Shown here piece after piece: positions 30,669 through 38,665 of a stretch of DNA of 64,000 nucleotides (positions are counted from its first letter, which is position 1; every line of letters starts with the position of its first letter). The translations under genes were made by a program, and so were the position numbers. The DNA lies in the IMG/VR virus record IMGVR_UViG_3300030099_004448, positions 174,938 to 238,937 of that record; one strand, given 5' to 3'. The notes under the pieces were generated by a model that was not told where the DNA came from, did not search any database, and saw nothing but the letters and a program-made list of their open reading frames with translations.

Positions 30669-31106
30669 CTACTTTGGAGAACGTATAAATTTTGCATAAG
30701 ATATAGAAGTCAATACGGGCAATTCAGTTGAAGTGACTTCATATAAATTACTCTGCATTTCTGCCCAGGTGTAGTTTCTAGGATCTTTGAAGTGTATATT
30801 GTATCCTCGGAATCCCCATCGAAATACTTCTAGACATTCGATCAATGGGTGTTGATCGTACTTAAGATCTCTTGTCTTTGCCTTATATAAAAACGTATAA
30901 TATTTTCCCTGATCGGGCACAGGTGTTACTGTATATTGCAACGCATCCATGATCAACATCATGCGATCTTCTACGTCTTGTTCTGCATTGATTTTATCTT
31001 TAATCGGACTAATCCTATCATCACTCAGAATAGGATCATCACCTTTTCCAATTAGATCTGCAAGGTCTTGTTCTGTTTTTCTTTGTTTTAGAGTCTTTCT
31101 TGGCAT
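30669..31106 (-). CDS. gp2: DNA end protector gp2-like protein
   Basis: G.YY.F.Y.AKT...YD.HPL...GF.G.N.H; adjacent to gp4. Confidence 0.65.
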   Translation of the reverse strand: MPRKTLKQRKTEQDLADLIGKGDDPILSDDRISPIKDKINAEQDVEDRMMLIMDALQYTVTPVPDQGKYYTFLYKAKTRDLKYDQHPLIECLEVFRWGFRGYNIHFKDPRNYTWAEMQSNLYEVTSTELPVLTSISYAKFIRSPK

Positions 31107-31546
31107 TACTTGATACCTAGATCTTTTTCTGTCATGATCTTGAATTCATAGTTTCTATCATCACAGAATTCCTGAGCTGCTTTCCACTTTGCTTGATTAA
31201 CTGCCCAGGTCTTGACTTTATATGCCCACTGTTTCGTCCTTCTTTTAGGATTTTGTTCGGGCATTTCTACTTCTCTTTGTGGTTTTATTTCAATCACCAT
31301 TGATCTTTTTTTACCAAACTTATCAGTATATCGAACAAGGAAGTCTGGATAGTATCGGTGGACTTTATTATCAATAGGAGAGATGTATGGAATACAGAAC
31401 TCTTCGGACTGCCACTGGTTTACATTTTCATTGAGATCACAATATCTCATAAACTTTCGTTCCCAGAGTGAACGATAAACTATATTTGCTGGGTCACCTT
31501 TATACTTTCGGGGATTCTCTGGTCGATATTTTCCCTTATAACTCAT
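31106..31546 (-). CDS. gp4: head completion nuclease gp4
   Basis: KG.Y.P.NP.KYKGD..NI.YRS.WE, HRYYPDF, EIKP, VNQAKW.AA; start reassigned to MSYKG. Confidence 0.92.
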   Translation of the reverse strand: MSYKGKYRPENPRKYKGDPANIVYRSLWERKFMRYCDLNENVNQWQSEEFCIPYISPIDNKVHRYYPDFLVRYTDKFGKKRSMVIEIKPQREVEMPEQNPKRRTKQWAYKVKTWAVNQAKWKAAQEFCDDRNYEFKIMTEKDLGIK

Positions 31547-31579
31547 ATACATAGTATAGATCCTTAAAAAATATTTATA

Positions 31580-32515
31580 GTGGCGGAAAATCTGTACAGA
31601 TATAGAGTTGACCCCCTTAACATTAAGATGACGGACGGCAAATCGTCTGCAGCTCAGGGTAACATCGGCGGTGTTATGGATTACCTGGGCGAGATTGCCA
31701 TGTCCAGTCAATTCAAACTAAATTTATTTTTGAGTGGTACTGGAACGAGTGAAAATGATGATTTGAACTCTTGGTTAAGACAGTGTGGAATATTTGGAGA
31801 TAATGCTAACGATCAACAACTGAAGTATGATCTACTGTGTCATCAAGCTCAGTTGCCAGGAACTCAGTTTGATCTAGCAACAGAAAAAGGTGGATTTCAG
31901 GGAGTTACTGAGACATTCGCAAGAGCCAGACAGTTCACCCAATTTGCAGTTTCATTTTATGTTGATAGTCAGTATAATGTTATTAGATTATTTGAAGAGT
32001 GGATGAATTTTATCAATCCACTTCACGTAACTGGTGGACCAGGTGTGAAGCCTGATTCGGGAAAAATTATTGAGGGTAGTCCTGCAGGAAGTTTGTTTAG
32101 ACAAGAAGCTCAAGAAGGGACAGCCTTTTTTAGGATGAGATATCCAGAAGCTTATAAGAAAAATATCACTATTACTAAGTTTGAAAGAAATGCTGGATTT
32201 CATTTGGGTAAGAATAGTATATACCCATATGAACAACAAAGTAGACAACTGACTTATCAATTTATTAATGCATTCCCCATTCAAATTGCTGCAGTTAATT
32301 TAAACTATGGTGGAAGTGAAATTGCAAAAGTCGATGTTGTCTTTAATTATGATCGATATACTACTATGAAACATGATCCTGGTAGACAAGTTTCAGTACC
32401 ACAGAATTTGACTATAGAAAGTTTAACACAACTACAGGGACTACCAGGATTCGCTATTGGAGATTTCTTAGACCAAGATGGTAACCCTCTGGGCGGATCC
32501 CAAAATATTGGATAA
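31580..32515 (+). CDS. gp54: baseplate tail-tube initiator gp54-like
   Basis: C..A.LPG, F.VD..Y.V.R.FE.W, F.NAFP, V.F.Y tail-tube fold motifs; position. Confidence 0.7.
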   Translation: MAENLYRYRVDPLNIKMTDGKSSAAQGNIGGVMDYLGEIAMSSQFKLNLFLSGTGTSENDDLNSWLRQCGIFGDNANDQQLKYDLLCHQAQLPGTQFDLATEKGGFQGVTETFARARQFTQFAVSFYVDSQYNVIRLFEEWMNFINPLHVTGGPGVKPDSGKIIEGSPAGSLFRQEAQEGTAFFRMRYPEAYKKNITITKFERNAGFHLGKNSIYPYEQQSRQLTYQFINAFPIQIAAVNLNYGGSEIAKVDVVFNYDRYTTMKHDPGRQVSVPQNLTIESLTQLQGLPGFAIGDFLDQDGNPLGGSQNIG

Positions 32516-32539: not shown

Positions 32540-33268
32540 ATGCCATTACCTAAGATTGCTGCGCCAACTTATGAGTTGACCCTACCCTCTACAGGAAAAA
32601 AAGTTAAGTATAGACCTTTTCTGGTCAAAGAAGAAAAAGTCTTGATTCTCGCTCTAGAAAGTCAAGACGTGAAACAAATTACCATGGCAATCAAACAAGT
32701 ATTGTCTGAGTGTATTCAAACTAGAGGTATCAAAGTAGAAGAACTTCCTTCATTTGATATTGAATATCTATTCTTGAATGTTCGTGGTAAATCAGTCGGA
32801 GAAGCAATCGAATTGATTGTTACCTGTCAAGATGATGGTGAGACCGAAGTACCTGTCAAAATTTATGTTGACCAAGTAGATATTCAGTTTGAAGAAGATC
32901 ATTCACCAGAAATTAAGTTGGATGATTCTGTTGTATTGAAAATGAAATATCCATCATTGGACCAATTCATTAAAAACAATTTTGACTTTAATGAACAAGA
33001 ATCGGTCAGTACTATTGAAAAATCATTTGAAATTATTGCTGAGTGCATCGATACTATCTTCACTGAAGAAGATGCTTGGTCCGCTAAAGACTGCACCAAG
33101 AAAGAACTATTAGAGTTTATTGAAGGAATGAATTCTTCACAGTTTAAGATGGTTGAAAAGTTTTTTGAAACCATGCCAAAATTGAGTCACACATTTACAG
33201 TGAAGAATCCTAAGACCAAGAAAGAAAATACTGTAACGCTGGAGGGGTTGACGAGTTTTTTCGGTTGA
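32540..33268 (+). CDS. gp26: baseplate hub assembly protein gp26-like (putative tail assembly chaperone)
   Basis: MPLPKI..PTYEL.LPS, YRPFLVKEEK, FDIEYLFL..R.KSVGE, FFETMPKL, LEGL.SFF. Confidence 0.9.
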   Translation: MPLPKIAAPTYELTLPSTGKKVKYRPFLVKEEKVLILALESQDVKQITMAIKQVLSECIQTRGIKVEELPSFDIEYLFLNVRGKSVGEAIELIVTCQDDGETEVPVKIYVDQVDIQFEEDHSPEIKLDDSVVLKMKYPSLDQFIKNNFDFNEQESVSTIEKSFEIIAECIDTIFTEEDAWSAKDCTKKELLEFIEGMNSSQFKMVEKFFETMPKLSHTFTVKNPKTKKENTVTLEGLTSFFG

Positions 33269-33306
33269 TAATGTCTCATATCAATCTTGAGGCATACTTT
33301 AAGATT
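33241..33306 (+). promoter_or_regulatory. putative -1 programmed ribosomal frameshift cassette
   Basis: GGAGG 33241-45; T_TTT_TTC 33256-62; 8-bp stem 33271-78/33288-95; loop AATCT pairs with AGATT 33302-06. Confidence 0.55.
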
Positions 33307-33450
33307 AACTTCGCTTTGATGCAGTTCCATAAATACAGCTTGACTGAGATCGAAAATATGATGCCTTGGGAAAGAGACATTTATCTTGCCCTATTGAGAG
33401 CTCACATTGAAGAAGAAAACCTAAAGGCACAACAAGCTAATGGCGGTTAG
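33271..33450 (+). CDS. gp51: gp51-like baseplate hub assembly protein (possible -1 frameshift extension of gp26)
   Basis: NFALMQ.HKYSLTEIENMMPWERDIY. Confidence 0.85.
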   Translation: MSHINLEAYFKINFALMQFHKYSLTEIENMMPWERDIYLALLRAHIEEENLKAQQANGG

Positions 33451-35209
33451 TAACTTACCAAATCTAAGTGTAGCAGCTCCTAGTTCTACTGGGAAAATAT
33501 CTCCACAGAGTATATCTGGAGGTCAGACCTTAGGTTCTGGTGTAGTTGAAAGTGCCGCTAACAATATTACAGGATTTAAGAGAGCAGGAACATCTGCCGT
33601 ATCACCAAAAGTTCCCAATATTGCAGCTCTTCTTCAAAGTATTTCTTCTAGTATTATCAGTAACGTAGAGAATATAACGAGTGGTGTTAAGAATGTAATT
33701 CAAGGCGGAATTACTAACGTAACAAATGTATTTGGTAGAAAAGAATCTGAGGAAGATCCGAATAAAATAATGTCGGAGTTCTTAGGACTCTACCAAAAGG
33801 CATTAGATTATATTAAATTCTTTGCAGATCCTAAACAGATACAAGGATTTGATAAAGCGATTAAATTATACCAAGATAGTTTAAAATCTACAGGAGATAC
33901 TGTAGTTACTATCAGGAAGTTCATCAAAAAGATGATCAAAGACTTCCTAAAATTAAAGAATGAACTTGCCAATATGGGAGGTGGTGGTGGTTTTAGATTA
34001 CCACGATTGCCCTTACCAGGAAGACAACCACGTCAACCCAGAGGACCCGCACGCCGACCTAGAACTAGGATGCCTAGAGGTAGAGGTGGTAAATTAGGCC
34101 TGGGATTATTGGGTCTAGGATTACTTGGTAGTGGCGCAATGGCTGCTAATAAGTTTATTGGTGGAAATGAGGAAAAACAACAAACGTCAGAAGGAATAAG
34201 TGGAGAACTCATTACAAAATTTGATGGTGTATTAGAAAAATTTGATCAAGCTATTGCTACTTTGGAGAATTTAACCGCATCAGCTGCAGGTGGTGGTGAT
34301 GGTAAACCCAAAAAAGTTAAAGATGGTGGTCCTAGAGGTGATGATCTTCTTCCTATGACTTCCGACTTTGATGCATCAAAAATAAAAGATGCATTTAACA
34401 CAGGATTGGTAACAGGTCCTAAAGGTCGGATAGGTCGTGGTACTGAATATCATATTGACTCTCAGTTTAGTAGTGATCTTCCTATGGAGGATATAGTTAA
34501 AATGGTGGATCAAATGGCACTAGCATATGATGCAATGGGTCGTGAAATGGAATTCTCTAACGCCGCGGTGGCAGATAAGATTTATAATCCTAACGCTAGT
34601 TTAGAAGAAAAAAGTGCGCTTTTAATGGACGTATTTAAAGCACATAATCTTCCCAGAGGACGAAAACTTGATGGAAAACATGGATTCTATCAAATGGATT
34701 ATTTTGTTCCTTTCAAAGGCAAAGGAAGAGGACATGAGAGTGCGGAAAGTGCTCCATTACTTTTGCCATTTCTACAAGACGGTAGTGTACGATATGAGAA
34801 GTCTGGTAGTTATGGTGCATCTGCTGATTTGATTGATTCCGAAGGAAAAGTTCGAGCGAGGGTTGGACATGGTGATGTTCGAGGTGCTAAATCTGGAACT
34901 ATTGACCTTTCTACAGTAAGACCATTCAGTCAACAAGTTCAACCAGTTGAAGAAGTAAAACCAGATCCCAAAGCACAAGAAGTAAGTCGTGCTGATCCAC
35001 AATCAACAAGTTTTATCCAACAAGTACCTGGATCAAATAGTGTTGCGGTCATACCCGCTTCTGATAGTTCTCAACCACAAACGCAGACACAACCACCACC
35101 TGCACTTGTAGCATCATCAGTAGAAAATATTAATTTTAATTTGACAGTTGAAAATCCTGATAATTTCTTTCCACTTTCGGCTAAACAAATGCTTAATATC
35201 GTAGGATAA
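33440..35209 (+). CDS. tape-measure-like virion protein with possible M23-like peptidase domain
   Basis: Helical N-part, RG-rich/Gly-zipper segment, YHID...SYG...VGH; position after gp26/51. Confidence 0.55.
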   Translation: MAVSNLPNLSVAAPSSTGKISPQSISGGQTLGSGVVESAANNITGFKRAGTSAVSPKVPNIAALLQSISSSIISNVENITSGVKNVIQGGITNVTNVFGRKESEEDPNKIMSEFLGLYQKALDYIKFFADPKQIQGFDKAIKLYQDSLKSTGDTVVTIRKFIKKMIKDFLKLKNELANMGGGGGFRLPRLPLPGRQPRQPRGPARRPRTRMPRGRGGKLGLGLLGLGLLGSGAMAANKFIGGNEEKQQTSEGISGELITKFDGVLEKFDQAIATLENLTASAAGGGDGKPKKVKDGGPRGDDLLPMTSDFDASKIKDAFNTGLVTGPKGRIGRGTEYHIDSQFSSDLPMEDIVKMVDQMALAYDAMGREMEFSNAAVADKIYNPNASLEEKSALLMDVFKAHNLPRGRKLDGKHGFYQMDYFVPFKGKGRGHESAESAPLLLPFLQDGSVRYEKSGSYGASADLIDSEGKVRARVGHGDVRGAKSGTIDLSTVRPFSQQVQPVEEVKPDPKAQEVSRADPQSTSFIQQVPGSNSVAVIPASDSSQPQTQTQPPPALVASSVENINFNLTVENPDNFFPLSAKQMLNIVG

Positions 35210-37389
35210 TGTCAGTAAATAATCTAACTCCAAAGGTAAGAACTAAAGCTAAAAAGGTATTGAATCTTGCGGTCAAATCCAAGAGATCGATGAAACTTAA
35301 TGAGTTGAACTTTGTTCGCACTTCAAGGTTTATTGAAAAAGAATCTAAGAGAATAAGCCAACCCAAAATTGATAAAAAAAAATTAAAGAAACTTTTAAAC
35401 ACCGACTTTGCTTCTATAGCGAGTGCAAGCCTCCCTGGTAAAGGTGGTGGAGGTCTTTTAGGATTATTAGGGGATGTTCTTGGTGGTTTTGGAGGTGGTG
35501 GGGGTAGAAGAGGTGGCCGTCGTGGTGGACCACCATCCAGAAGAGCACAACAAAGATATAGAAGAAGATTTGGAAATAGAGCTGGAAATAGAAGATTTGG
35601 TAGAATGCCTCAATTTGGTAGAGGTGGAGGTGTTCGTGTTCCCAGAGCGGGTGGATTGCTTGGTGTTGCAATGGCAGGACTTGAGTATGGAGGAAGAGTA
35701 TCTGAAGGACAAACACAGACACAGGCAATAACAGGAACTGCTGCATCCACTGCTGGTGGTATTGCTGGTGCATATGCAGGCGCAAAAGGTGGTGCTCTAT
35801 TAGGTGCTGGAATTGGTGCCTTGTTTGGTGGTGTGGGTGCTGTTCCTGGTGCTGCTATTGGTGGATTTCTTGGTGGAATTGCTGGTGGATTCGGTGGATC
35901 CATGATAGGTGGTGATATTTCGGATAGACTTACTGGTGTTGTTGGTAAGGATAAGGATAGCGAAGAAGCGGAAAAAGAACTAGAGAAGAAATCTAAGATC
36001 AATCCACTTGGAATGACTTTAGATAAGTTTGATCAAGTAGTTGACAGATTTGCTAAAGCTATAGTAAATCTAGATCTTGGTGGAAGAATTGAAGAGAGTG
36101 AAGATGAACCACCTAAAAGAGAAGACTTCCCAAATACAAGATCTGGAGCAAAGGCATATAATGAAGCGAGGCAGAGATATAGAGAAAGACAGGAAGAACG
36201 AAAAGCAAAAATACAAGAAGCACTAGACTTTGAACAGAATCAGTTTAAAAAGGGACAACAAGAGCGTGCAAGAGTAAAAACCAGAGAACAGGCAGACAAA
36301 GCGGGATTTGGAATACTTGAGGGAATCCTAGGTGAAGGGATATATGATTCCTTGATGAAGCAAGTATTTTTTGATATTCAACCTGAATCAAAAGAACCAG
36401 ATGCTACTACAAAATTTCTTACCAATTTAGGTATTTCCCCAGAAGCACAGGGTATATCGGCAATGTTAATCGAAACCGTACTGAGTGCGGCTTTGATGGC
36501 TAGGGGCAGAGGAGTTATGAAACCTCCTGCAGTTAAAACACGCCCTTTAACAAAACCAACAGCACTACAAGGTCCAGAACTTCCTCCAGTACAAAGACAA
36601 CCCGTCTCAAAACCTAGAGTAGTACGAAGTGCGGATACACTTCCAAGGCCAGAGGTTAAACCAACAGAACCTATGGTGCGACAACCAGCTCAGTCAGTGC
36701 AAGATGTATTGAATAAAAATAGAAGAGGTCGTTTAAAGAGAACCGTCAATCAAGTTGAAAAAAGTCAAAGGAGATCTGAAGCAGAACTAGATGCTGCAAG
36801 AGATATGGCAGAGGGAGGTTTTAGAAGAAGTCAATCCACAGTAAAACCTCAACAAAATCTGATTGAAGGTCAAACTACACTTCCTGATGGTTCTACTGTC
36901 TATTACCGTAGACCCATGGGTCGATCAGCCGCATCTAGACGAAATCAATTAAAATCATCAAAAACATCGTCAGAGACGCAGACAGATAGTGCAACTAAAA
37001 TTATGGAGAGAGAACAACTTCAGGTTGACGCTGATAAACTTAGTGATAAGGTAAGATTAAACCAGACTATTCAGGATGCTATAGATCAGGCTGCTCGGGA
37101 TGCCGAACGAGTAATAAAAATAAAAAAGAAAAAGAAATTCTCTCCCAGTAGTACCAATCCCTTGGAAGGTAAGGAACTTTCTAGTATAAATCAATATACA
37201 ACTTACAATGCACCAAATAATACCACTATTATTATGCAGCAGGGTGGAAATCAAATGCCGCCGCAGAGTCCACCACCACAGATGATGGCATCTGCTCCAC
37301 CTCCAACGATGCCACCAGGTCCGTCAGCGATTGATGTTGTATCACATTTGAATACGGTTATCTTCTTAAACAACTTACAAACTACTTAA
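35209..37389 (+). CDS. tape-measure-like virion protein
   Basis: RG-rich stretch, long GxxxG hydrophobic zipper, charged helical regions. Confidence 0.55.
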   Translation: MSVNNLTPKVRTKAKKVLNLAVKSKRSMKLNELNFVRTSRFIEKESKRISQPKIDKKKLKKLLNTDFASIASASLPGKGGGGLLGLLGDVLGGFGGGGGRRGGRRGGPPSRRAQQRYRRRFGNRAGNRRFGRMPQFGRGGGVRVPRAGGLLGVAMAGLEYGGRVSEGQTQTQAITGTAASTAGGIAGAYAGAKGGALLGAGIGALFGGVGAVPGAAIGGFLGGIAGGFGGSMIGGDISDRLTGVVGKDKDSEEAEKELEKKSKINPLGMTLDKFDQVVDRFAKAIVNLDLGGRIEESEDEPPKREDFPNTRSGAKAYNEARQRYRERQEERKAKIQEALDFEQNQFKKGQQERARVKTREQADKAGFGILEGILGEGIYDSLMKQVFFDIQPESKEPDATTKFLTNLGISPEAQGISAMLIETVLSAALMARGRGVMKPPAVKTRPLTKPTALQGPELPPVQRQPVSKPRVVRSADTLPRPEVKPTEPMVRQPAQSVQDVLNKNRRGRLKRTVNQVEKSQRRSEAELDAARDMAEGGFRRSQSTVKPQQNLIEGQTTLPDGSTVYYRRPMGRSAASRRNQLKSSKTSSETQTDSATKIMEREQLQVDADKLSDKVRLNQTIQDAIDQAARDAERVIKIKKKKKFSPSSTNPLEGKELSSINQYTTYNAPNNTTIIMQQGGNQMPPQSPPPQMMASAPPPTMPPGPSAIDVVSHLNTVIFLNNLQTT

Positions 37390-37390
37390 G

Positions 37391-38665
37391 ATGTCAGTAG
37401 CACTAACAGGATTAGATGTAATAGGCGCAGAAATTATCTCTGCGAATGGAAAACGTGTAGATTTTACTAATGGTATCAGGGATATTAATTACTTTGAAGA
37501 CATTTTATCTCCATGTTGCACGATGTCCATCACTGTCGATCTTGGAAGTAGAATAGTTAATTCTTTACCAATTCGTGGTGGAGAAAAAGTAGTTATAAAA
37601 TTAAGAACAGCTACTGGTGATTTTGATAGAGATGGGAATAAGGCTTTTTACGTTAAAAAAGTACAAAATTATGCTTCTGATGGACAGAAAGAAACATTTA
37701 CGTTGCAACTTGTAAGTAGAGAAGGTCTCACCAATGAGACGGCTAGATGTGAAAGAAAATATCAAAAACTTACTATTGATCAACACGTAAAAGCTATCCT
37801 AGATGATGTCCTCAAAACAAGTAACTATGAATCTAAAAATATAGAAAAAACAGCAAACACATATAGTTTTATTGGAAATCAGAAGAAACCTTTTTATATT
37901 TTGAATTGGTTGTTACCTAAAGGTATTCCAGTTTCTGGACAATCTGGAACAAATGGATCGCGAGCTGTAGGTGTTTCGGGATTTTTCTTTTATGAAAATT
38001 CTGAGGGTTTTAATTTTAAGAGTATTGAAAAACTTGTTGGAGGTGTAGATAAAACAAATCAACCAGTTGCTGAATACACATATTCCAATGTAATTGAACA
38101 CAATAAACTATCAGTTGAATTTAAAATTCTAGATTATAAAGTGTCTAGAAACATTGATCTCATAAGTTCATTGAGAACAGGAATGTATTCAAATATTACA
38201 TTTTTCTTCGATCTTTACGAAAACCGAACAGATTTCTATCAATATGACCTAAAAGACGAAATCCTTGATAAACTAGGGGAGCAGGATGACATAGATGTTC
38301 CTGGAGGATTTGAAAGTGCTCCATCAAGAATTCTAGTCAGAACAGCAGACAGAGGTATCCTAGATCCCAATGATATTGCTGCCGACTCTGGTAGAGATAC
38401 TGCTGATATGGCAAAATCTTTCGCTAGATATAACTTGCTCTTCACTCAGTCACTAAATATGGTAGTACCATGTAACATAGGATTGAAGGTGGGTGATGTA
38501 ATTTCCGCTACTTTTCCAAAAGTTAGTTCTTCTGAAAAAGCGGAAAAAGACAATCAACAAAGTGGCAACTACTTAATAAAAAGTCTAAGACATCACTTTG
38601 AAGCAAACTCGAATGTAACTTACTTAAGTTTAATTCGTGACTCATACGGTCTCACAGATAATTAA
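37391..38665 (+). CDS. baseplate hub protein (gp27-like)
   Basis: YFEDI.SP, LPI.GGE, FFYE...GF.FKSIE, SG.YLI..L.H, L.RDS. Confidence 0.65.
   Translation: MSVALTGLDVIGAEIISANGKRVDFTNGIRDINYFEDILSPCCTMSITVDLGSRIVNSLPIRGGEKVVIKLRTATGDFDRDGNKAFYVKKVQNYASDGQKETFTLQLVSREGLTNETARCERKYQKLTIDQHVKAILDDVLKTSNYESKNIEKTANTYSFIGNQKKPFYILNWLLPKGIPVSGQSGTNGSRAVGVSGFFFYENSEGFNFKSIEKLVGGVDKTNQPVAEYTYSNVIEHNKLSVEFKILDYKVSRNIDLISSLRTGMYSNITFFFDLYENRTDFYQYDLKDEILDKLGEQDDIDVPGGFESAPSRILVRTADRGILDPNDIAADSGRDTADMAKSFARYNLLFTQSLNMVVPCNIGLKVGDVISATFPKVSSSEKAEKDNQQSGNYLIKSLRHHFEANSNVTYLSLIRDSYGLTDN

What the first reader, a model, noticed from the sequence alone, without database searches (positions are those of the whole stretch)
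33241..33450. Candidate -1 programmed frameshift fusing gp26 and gp51: a lambda G/GT-like tail chaperone pair in a T4-like phage
Seen: gp26 ends ...AGT TTT TTC GGT TGA, giving an X_XXY_YYZ heptamer T_TTT_TTC (33256-62). The -1 frame continues CGG TTG ATA ATG TCT... directly into the gp51-like ORF with no stop, predicting a 303-aa fusion. An SD-like GGAGG sits 10 nt upstream of the heptamer, too far (25 nt) to serve the gp51 ATG. An 8-bp stem (33271-78/33288-95) starts 8 nt downstream and buries the gp51 ATG. Its loop AATCT can pair with AGATT (33302-06) to give an H-type pseudoknot. The pair lies between the tail-tube-fold gene and the tape-measure-like genes. Established: G/GT chaperones at this genomic position use -1 frameshifts in many long-tailed phages, and an internal SD about 10 nt upstream plus 3' structure stimulates E. 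coli dnaX frameshifting. Inference: the so-called gp51 here is the frameshift extension rather than an independent gene.
Basis: partly seen in the sequence, partly recalled or inferred. Interest (0 to 1): 0.8.

Follow-up and report, generated by a model that had tools for sequence, protein, structure and literature searches.

The report
Frameshift-made tail chaperone gene pair
This T4-like cyanophage very probably makes a short and a long form of its tail-assembly chaperone (gp26, and gp26 fused to "gp51") by ribosomes slipping back one base at a TTTTTTC site; the signal is deeply conserved, but it was already described for T4-like phages in 2022.

Summary
gp26 (32540-33268) carries the in-frame heptamer T_TTT_TTC (33256-62) two codons before its stop. 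The 59-codon "gp51" ORF lies in the -1 frame with no intervening stop, which predicts a 303-aa fusion.

Comparative evidence strongly supports a programmed -1 frameshift:
- The heptamer is invariant in 83 junctions, from cyanophages to Caulobacter, Vibrio, Aeromonas, Cronobacter, Stenotrophomonas and Delftia phages.
- Its three codons are 3 of only 5 codon columns (of 239) with an invariant third base.
- Many lineages have no start codon for the downstream ORF.
- T4 gp51 is a gp26 paralogue plus this C-terminal extension, aligned without a gap across the predicted junction.
- Four phages with a separate full-length gene 51 have no heptamer in gene 26.

The proposed stimulators fare worse. The 8-bp hairpin is real in this phage but limited to some lineages. 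The GGAGG is only partly conserved. The pseudoknot has no comparative support.

The idea is not new. [quoted passage not shown] Database records still list two separate genes. Verdict: real, ordinary, already known in kind.

The parts
31580..32515 (+). Tail-tube-fold gene (gp54/gp48-like) immediately upstream of the chaperone pair
   Evidence: Pfam Phage_TTP_2 E 3.8e-19 and PHROG 45 'tail tube' E 5e-29. The closest isolate, S-SCSM2R, annotates its counterpart as tail tube protein.
32540..33268 (+). gp26 ORF, the short chaperone form (TAC-N equivalent), 242 aa, stop TGA at 33266-68
   Evidence: Pfam T4_baseplate PF12322 E 3.2e-71 and PHROG 150 E 3.4e-79. BLASTP to T4 gp26 gives E 3e-8 over the full length.
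33241..33247 (+). SD-like GGAGGGG, 10 nt 5' of the heptamer; a possible but unproven stimulator
   Evidence: Seen in the sequence. GGAGG occurs in 32 of 57 junction types. GAG is used at this Glu codon in 72% of genes against 32% elsewhere in the gene. It overlaps the invariant Glu-Gly codons.
33256..33262 (+). Slippery heptamer T_TTT_TTC, the proposed site of the -1 tandem tRNA-Phe slip
   Evidence: Invariant in 83 junctions, with TTTTTTT in Cr30. Its three codons have invariant third bases, and the preceding codon is AGT, TCT, GAT or GGT, always ending in T. It is absent from gene 26 of T4, GAP161, Ac42 and avDM1, which carry a separate full-length gene 51.
33262..33450 (+). -1 frame extension (62 codons, then TAG at 33448-50), the TAC-C / Gp51_C part of the 303-aa fusion; it contains the annotated 59-aa 'gp51' ORF (ATG 33271)
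   Evidence: PHROG 634 'baseplate hub assembly catalyst' E 4.6e-26. BLASTP to T4 gp51 residues 200-244 gives E 2e-6 with no gap at the junction. 892 cluster representatives match at E <= 0.001, and many matches begin at the FF of the heptamer.
33271..33295 (+). Hairpin: 8-bp stem 33271-78 / 33288-95 with a 9-nt loop, starting 8 nt after the heptamer and burying the AUG at 33271
   Evidence: -9.1 kcal/mol, z = -5.4. Kept in this clade and a few others, with two compensatory changes (L021, L059). Replaced by other hairpins or none elsewhere.
33440..35209 (+). 589-aa ORF that overlaps the end of the extension by 11 nt; candidate tape measure (gp29 position)
   Evidence: Inferred from position and length only. 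T4 gp29 is 590 aa. Cr30, KVP40-like phages and Aeromonas phage 65 have a 562-657-aa gene at this position. There is no Pfam, PHROG or NCBIfam hit and no BLASTP similarity to T4 gp29 or the Cr30 tape measure.

Best explanation
gp26 and the small "gp51" ORF form one recoded gene.

Proposed mechanism:
- Most ribosomes translate gp26 (242 aa) and stop at TGA 33266-68.
- A minority slip back one base while the two tRNA-Phe sit on UUU-UUC of U_UUU_UUC (33256-62) and re-pair on UUU-UUU.
- These ribosomes continue in the -1 frame through CGG UUG AUA AUG... to the stop at 33448-50.
- The result is a 303-aa protein: the whole gp26 domain plus a 62-residue C-terminal domain (Gp51_C).

The two products correspond to the short and long forms of a tail assembly chaperone. 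These are lambda G/GT, P2 E/E+E' and, in T4, the separate genes 26 and 51. They probably act on the tape-measure protein encoded just downstream during hub and tube assembly.

Shown here: the signal, the reading-frame register, their conservation, and homology to T4 gp26 and gp51.
Inferred: that slippage actually occurs, its efficiency (probably a few per cent), any help from the local hairpin and the upstream GGAGG, and the chaperone function.
For: 1. Heptamer and -1 register are kept in 77 of 78 IMG/VR cyanophage loci at 63-100% gp26 identity. They are also kept in Cr30, LPCS28, Moby, Aeromonas phage 65, ValKK3 and PhiW-14 and in environmental loci L094-L110.
2. In 67 unique genes, only 5 of 239 codon columns have an invariant third base, and three of them are the heptamer codons. 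Other conserved Phe columns mix TTT and TTC.
3. In L011-L014 and L053 a -1 frame stop lies directly 5' of the heptamer, so the shift can only happen there.
4. LPCS28, Aeromonas phage 65 and L094-L110 have no ATG near the junction.
5. T4 gp51 is T4_baseplate (residues 1-201, E 3.9e-52) plus an extension. T4 residues 200-244 (FKLL...) align without a gap to the trans-frame FRLI... of the window.
6. Gene 26 of four phages with a full-length gene 51 lacks any heptamer; T4 has TTC TTT.
7. Phage P2 uses the nearly identical GGT TTT TTG for its annotated E/E+E' frameshift.
8. Literature agrees.
Against: - There is no direct evidence of the fusion protein. No proteomic or reporter data were available.
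- The sequencing runs were held only as contigs, which drop rare variants.
- An AUG 5 nt after the stop is kept in 40 of 57 cyanophage junction types, so separate translation is possible.
- No 3' structure is conserved across the family: RNAalifold finds none and the stem is 59% paired.
- U_UUU_UUC efficiency in cyanobacteria is unknown.
- The fold link of gp26 to canonical chaperones is weak: Foldseek to HK97 2ob9 gives E 2.0, and hhalign to P2 gpE is negative.
Confidence: 0.85

Rival explanations
1. Two separate proteins only. The 59-aa ORF is translated from its own AUG (33271) by termination-reinitiation after the gp26 stop two bases upstream. The heptamer simply encodes a conserved Phe-Phe.
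For: ATG lies 5 nt after the stop in 40 of 57 junction types, and at +14 in 11 more. Stop-start spacing of this kind is typical of coupled genes. All database records annotate two genes.
Against: - Many lineages have no start codon.
- The third bases of the heptamer codons are invariant, and the preceding codon varies yet always ends in T.
- Phe-Phe in T4 gp26 is encoded TTC TTT, and two-gene phages lose the motif.
- Homology to T4 gp51 and to hundreds of -1 frame ORFs starts at the FF, upstream of the AUG.
- Only 9 of 40 AUG-bearing junctions have an SD-like 4-mer in range.
Confidence: 0.07
2. Transcriptional slippage. RNA polymerase adds one U in the T6 run, and the edited mRNA encodes the fusion in one frame.
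For: The site is a homopolymer run. The title of Vladimirov et al. [quoted passage not shown]
Against: - Six T is shorter than runs known to give efficient polymerase slippage (own knowledge).
- The conserved feature is the framed X_XXY_YYZ pattern with a fixed C at position 7, not the run length.
- Two contigs from RNA-labelled or untyped runs span the junction without an indel, but contigs hide rare variants.
Confidence: 0.05
3. Chance. The heptamer and the open -1 frame are coincidental, and the small ORF is an unrelated gene.
For: A single in-frame heptamer near a gene end is expected by chance in a window of this size.
Against: Conservation across more than 80 junctions and several phage families, together with the T4 gp51 architecture.
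Confidence: 0.01

Closest known systems
[quoted passage not shown]
   Same: It is the same protein family: T4_baseplate PF12322 in gp26 and in gp51 residues 1-201, with the same C-terminal extension. Citing papers report poly-T slippery sequences in the short-form genes of T4-like phages and a short/long chaperone logic.
   Different: T4 and about 1,380 related records encode the long form as a separate full-length gene 51. In T4 it lies on the opposite strand to gene 26, and no heptamer is present. The window phage has one recoded gene. Its gp26 also lacks the CxxC / CPxCG cysteines of T4 gp26.
Phage P2 E / E+E' (-1 frameshift annotated in RefSeq NC_001895)
   Same: It is also a myovirus, with a short ORF between the tube gene and the tape measure gene. 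The heptamer is nearly identical (GGT TTT TTG) and lies near the end of the short ORF, and the -1 extension overlaps the start of the tape measure gene.
   Different: P2 gpE is 91 aa (Pfam Phage_TAC_7), whereas gp26 is 242 aa. No sequence relationship was detectable by hhalign (probability 0.55%). The only link is a weak language-model lead.
Lambda G / GT
   Same: [quoted passage not shown]
   Different: The heptamer differs (G_GGA_AAG in lambda, own knowledge), the phage is a siphovirus, and the fold relationship is not demonstrated here (Foldseek to the HK97 chaperone 2ob9: E 2.0).
E. coli dnaX frameshift cassette (upstream SD + heptamer + 3' hairpin)
   Same: In this window a GGAGG lies 10 nt 5' of the heptamer and a hairpin starts 8 nt 3' of it.
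   Different: Neither flanking element is conserved across homologues. In dnaX the shifted frame ends early, whereas here it extends the protein.

Membership tests
T4 gp26/gp51 family (Pfam T4_baseplate PF12322 plus Gp51_C extension) | Significant match of the upstream ORF to PF12322 | tested here: met
   E 3.2e-71 over residues 9-241. T4 gp26 scores 8.8e-64 and T4 gp51 scores 3.9e-52 against the same model.
T4 gp26/gp51 family (Pfam T4_baseplate PF12322 plus Gp51_C extension) | C-terminal extension homologous to the C-terminus of T4 gp51 | tested here: met
   BLASTP E 2e-6, T4 gp51 residues 200-244 against -1 frame residues 2-47. PHROG 634 E 4.6e-26. A relative's read-through product carries the precomputed Pfam hit PF28602 Gp51_C.
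Frameshift-made tail assembly chaperone pair (lambda G/GT, P2 E/E+E' type) | [quoted passage not shown] | tested here: met
   T_TTT_TTC at 33256-62. The -1 frame is open from 33214 to 33450.
Frameshift-made tail assembly chaperone pair (lambda G/GT, P2 E/E+E' type) | Heptamer and frame offset conserved among diverged homologues | tested here: met
   83 junctions carry the heptamer, and 77 of 78 cyanophage loci keep the -1 register. Synonymous-site test.
Frameshift-made tail assembly chaperone pair (lambda G/GT, P2 E/E+E' type) | Position between the tail tube gene and the tape measure gene | tested here: inconclusive
   The upstream tube-fold gene is shown. The downstream 589-aa ORF has no family hit and is called a tape measure only from synteny and length.
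Frameshift-made tail assembly chaperone pair (lambda G/GT, P2 E/E+E' type) | Long fusion protein actually made at a low ratio to the short form | not testable with these tools
   No proteomic data were available. The RNA runs were held only as contigs.
Canonical chaperone fold (HK97 / lambda gpG spiral; Pfam Phage_TAC families) | Detectable sequence or structural homology of the short form to known chaperones | tested here: inconclusive
   AlphaFold model pLDDT 86. Foldseek to PDB gives no hit at E <= 0.001; 2ob9 (HK97 chaperone) scores E 2.0, probability 0.47, 56 columns. hhalign against P2 gpE relatives gives probability 0.55% with shallow profiles. In the Atlas, 50 of the 100 nearest named clusters are Phage_TAC_7 or Gp41_Mu, but at scores of 0.48-0.51.
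dnaX-type stimulated frameshift cassette | Conserved SD-like element about 10 nt 5' and a stem-loop 5-9 nt 3' of the heptamer | tested here: inconclusive
   Both are present in the window. GGAGG occurs in 32 of 57 junction types. The stem is 59% paired and RNAalifold finds no consensus structure. Mean z of downstream folding is -1.58.
H-type pseudoknot stimulator | Loop-to-downstream helix maintained or covarying in relatives | tested here: not met
   Helix 58-62/77-81 of alignment A1 is 58.9% paired and no better than shuffles or a -1 slide. It is broken in L003 at 98% gp26 identity.

The most novel reading that the evidence does not exclude
The cyanophage locus may yield three products rather than two: gp26, the frameshift fusion, and a free 59-aa Gp51_C peptide made by reinitiation at the AUG that 40 of 57 cyanophage junction types keep 5 nt after the stop. 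Frameshift stimulation may rest on interchangeable, lineage-specific hairpins (or none) around an invariant heptamer-codon-stop module, instead of one conserved structure.
Probability: 0.2. Interest if true: 0.4.

Novelty: already known. Interest (0 to 1): 0.3.

Why it matters
The practical value lies in annotation. Hundreds of cyanophage and other T4-like phage records list a "baseplate hub" gene and a separate small "hub assembly catalyst" or hypothetical gene. The evidence says these are one recoded gene that gives a short and a long chaperone.

The result also explains T4's puzzling pair gp26 and gp51 as the two-gene version of the same device. It gives a clean natural control: the heptamer is lost wherever gene 51 is full length.

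For ocean virology, it marks a conserved, testable recoding event in some of the most abundant phages known. It does not open a new question, because the concept was published in 2022.

Tried and rejected
- One consensus 3' structure: RNAalifold on 57 junctions gave none. The pseudoknot is rejected.
- Solved relatives: a profile search of PDB sequences found nothing meaningful. Foldseek against PDB found no significant hit. Foldseek against viral models returned only other "baseplate hub" proteins.
- hhalign of gp26 against P2 gpE relatives was negative, but both profiles are shallow.
- The search for homologous proteins with gp26 returned only close 241-243-aa relatives, so it said nothing about fusions.
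- Natural in-frame fusions among cluster representatives: P0242 comes from an error-ridden polished contig with several split genes, so it is an artefact. P0333 could not be traced. Neither is used as evidence.
- Single-protein locus searches with distant gp26 queries returned few loci.
- Reads: only Logan contigs were on offer. Two span the junction without an indel, which cannot exclude rare slippage.
- The tape measure identity of the 589-aa ORF could not be shown by BLASTP, Pfam, PHROGs or NCBIfam.
- The primary paper (Vladimirov et al. 2022) is not held. Its content is taken from two citing papers.
- A literature search for TTTTTTC led nowhere.

Full report
**Observation.**
- The gp26 ORF runs 32540-33268 (242 aa) and ends AGT TTT TTC GGT TGA.
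- T_TTT_TTC occupies 33256-62 in the gp26 frame.
- The -1 frame is open from 33214. It reads CGG TTG ATA ATG after the heptamer and continues to the TAG at 33448-50. The predicted product is 241 + 62 = 303 aa.
- GGAGGGG lies at 33241-47. The stem 33271-78 / 33288-95 forms 8 pairs, one of them G-U. AATCT and AGATT are complementary.
- gp26 matches Pfam T4_baseplate (E 3.2e-71). The 59-aa ORF matches PHROG 634 "baseplate hub assembly catalyst" (E 4.6e-26). It also matches the last 40 positions of the gp26 PHROG, a first hint that fused forms exist.
- The gene upstream has a tail-tube fold.

**Is it more than chance?** Within one genome it is not. The window has 76 in-frame canonical heptamers in 19,850 codons, so one near a stop is expected. 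The comparative data settle the matter.
- 78 IMG/VR loci with 63-100% gp26 identity all carry TTTTTTC. A stop follows after one more codon, and 77 keep the downstream ORF in the -1 frame. The exception, L071, has a 20-nt duplication.
- Among 67 unique genes, only 5 of 239 codon columns have an invariant third base, and three of these are the consecutive heptamer codons.
- The codon before the Phe pair changes amino acid (Ser AGT or TCT, Asp GAT, Gly GGT) but always ends in T.
- Other conserved Phe columns mix TTT and TTC freely.
- In some loci a -1 frame stop sits directly before the heptamer, which pins the shift to that site.

**Breadth.** The same heptamer (TTTTTTT in Cr30) and a 54-65-codon -1 ORF occur well outside the cyanophages.
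- They are found in Caulobacter phage Cr30, Cronobacter LPCS28, Stenotrophomonas Moby, Aeromonas phage 65, Vibrio ValKK3 and Delftia PhiW-14. They are also found in environmental loci L094-L110.
- Several of these have no ATG anywhere near the junction, so the extension can only be reached from gp26.
- A search of 1.8 billion cluster representatives with the -1 frame peptide found 892 matches. In many of them similarity begins exactly at the Phe-Phe of the heptamer.

**The T4 key.**
- In T4, genes 26 and 51 are separate and divergent.
- T4 gp51 (249 aa) is itself a T4_baseplate protein over residues 1-201 (E 3.9e-52).
- Its residues 200-244 (FKLL...) align without a gap to the window's trans-frame FRLI... 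sequence (E 2e-6).
- So T4 gp51 has the architecture predicted for the frameshift product.
- Gene 26 of T4 (TTC TTT), GAP161, Ac42 and avDM1 lacks any slippery heptamer. About 1,380 phage records carry a full-length gene 51.
- The heptamer is therefore tied to the presence of a -1 extension, not to the Phe-Phe motif.

**Stimulators.**
- The window hairpin is predicted at -9.1 kcal/mol (z = -5.4). It recurs in this clade and a few others, with compensatory changes in L021 and L059.
- Across 57 junction types it is only 59% paired, other lineages have different hairpins or none, and RNAalifold finds no consensus.
- The pseudoknot helix is indistinguishable from controls.
- GGAGG is present in 32 of 57 junction types. 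GAG is enriched at that Glu codon (72% against 32%), but the motif overlaps the invariant Glu-Gly codons.

**Family membership and function.**
- The gp26 model is confident (pLDDT 86), but it has no significant PDB neighbour.
- The best compact matches are the HK97 tail assembly chaperone 2ob9 (E 2.0) and 3fgx.
- hhalign to P2 gpE relatives is negative.
- A language-model search places Phage_TAC_7 and Gp41_Mu clusters among the nearest neighbours, at low scores.
- Chaperone function thus rests on three things: gene position, the short/long logic, and the literature.
- P2's annotated E/E+E' site, GGT TTT TTG, is nearly the same signal.

**Prior knowledge.**
- PMC10274946 summarises the same paper as showing that some T4-like phages carry a short gene and a long fused gene instead of frameshifting.
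- One GenBank record already names gp51 "tape measure protein assembly chaperone", and a Pfam family Gp51_C exists.
- The finding is therefore a correct rediscovery.

**Rivals.**
- Separate translation of the small ORF is possible in this phage, because the AUG is kept in 40 of 57 junction types. It cannot explain the nucleotide-level conservation or the lineages without a start codon.
- Transcriptional slippage is unlikely on six T and could not be tested with contigs.

**Verdict.** The frameshift is very probably real (0.85). The pseudoknot is unsupported, the other proposed stimulators are local at best, and the novelty is low.

Noticed in passing
L112:1801-3094 (Cronobacter phage GAP161): gp54, gp51 (long form), gp26 (short form) and gp25 lie in tandem on one strand, long form first. 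This looks like an intermediate between the single recoded gene and T4's divergent genes 26 and 51.
   Followed up: partly
L087:3200-3440 (Vibrio phage Kuja, Ackermannviridae): gp26 ends AAC CTT TTT CAA TAA with no canonical heptamer. Yet the -1 frame is open 94 nt upstream and 63 codons downstream with no nearby ATG. This may be a P-site slip on U_UUU, as with the GTTTTT motif reported for Vandenendeviridae and Andersonviridae (PMC12846349).
   Followed up: no
window 32540-33268: This cyanophage gp26 lacks the CxxC ... CPxCG cysteines (a likely zinc ribbon) found near the C-terminus of gp26 in T4, KVP40-like phages, Moby, LPCS28 and others. It has NPKTKKEN at that position.
   Followed up: no
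window 31106-31711 (- strand) and 30669-31106 (- strand): A 201-aa ORF combines a TnsA-like endonuclease N-terminal domain (E 4e-22) with PHROG 'head closure'. Next to it is a gp2-like DNA end protector.
   Followed up: no
window 33440-38665: Three large ORFs (589, 726 and 424 aa) follow the chaperone pair. The closest isolate labels them SleB-like hydrolase, endolysin and tail lysozyme. The 726-aa ORF has weak tape-measure and lysin PHROG hits. Which of them is the true tape measure is unresolved.
   Followed up: partly
L071:about 2350-2420: A 20-nt tandem duplication just after the junction puts the extension out of register in this 4-kb contig. It is probably an assembly error.
   Followed up: partly
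L116 (ENA contig hoskyn_2__contig_5456_pilon): A polished long contig has the tube gene, gp26 and the downstream ORF all split into fragments. gp26 reads straight into the extension, so indel errors can mimic natural fusions in protein databases.
   Followed up: yes
window 33263-33310: An outer 7-bp helix (GGTTGAT with ATTAACT) encloses the hairpin in the minimum-energy fold and competes with the proposed pseudoknot arm. It starts right at the heptamer, so a ribosome on the slip site would have melted it.
   Followed up: no
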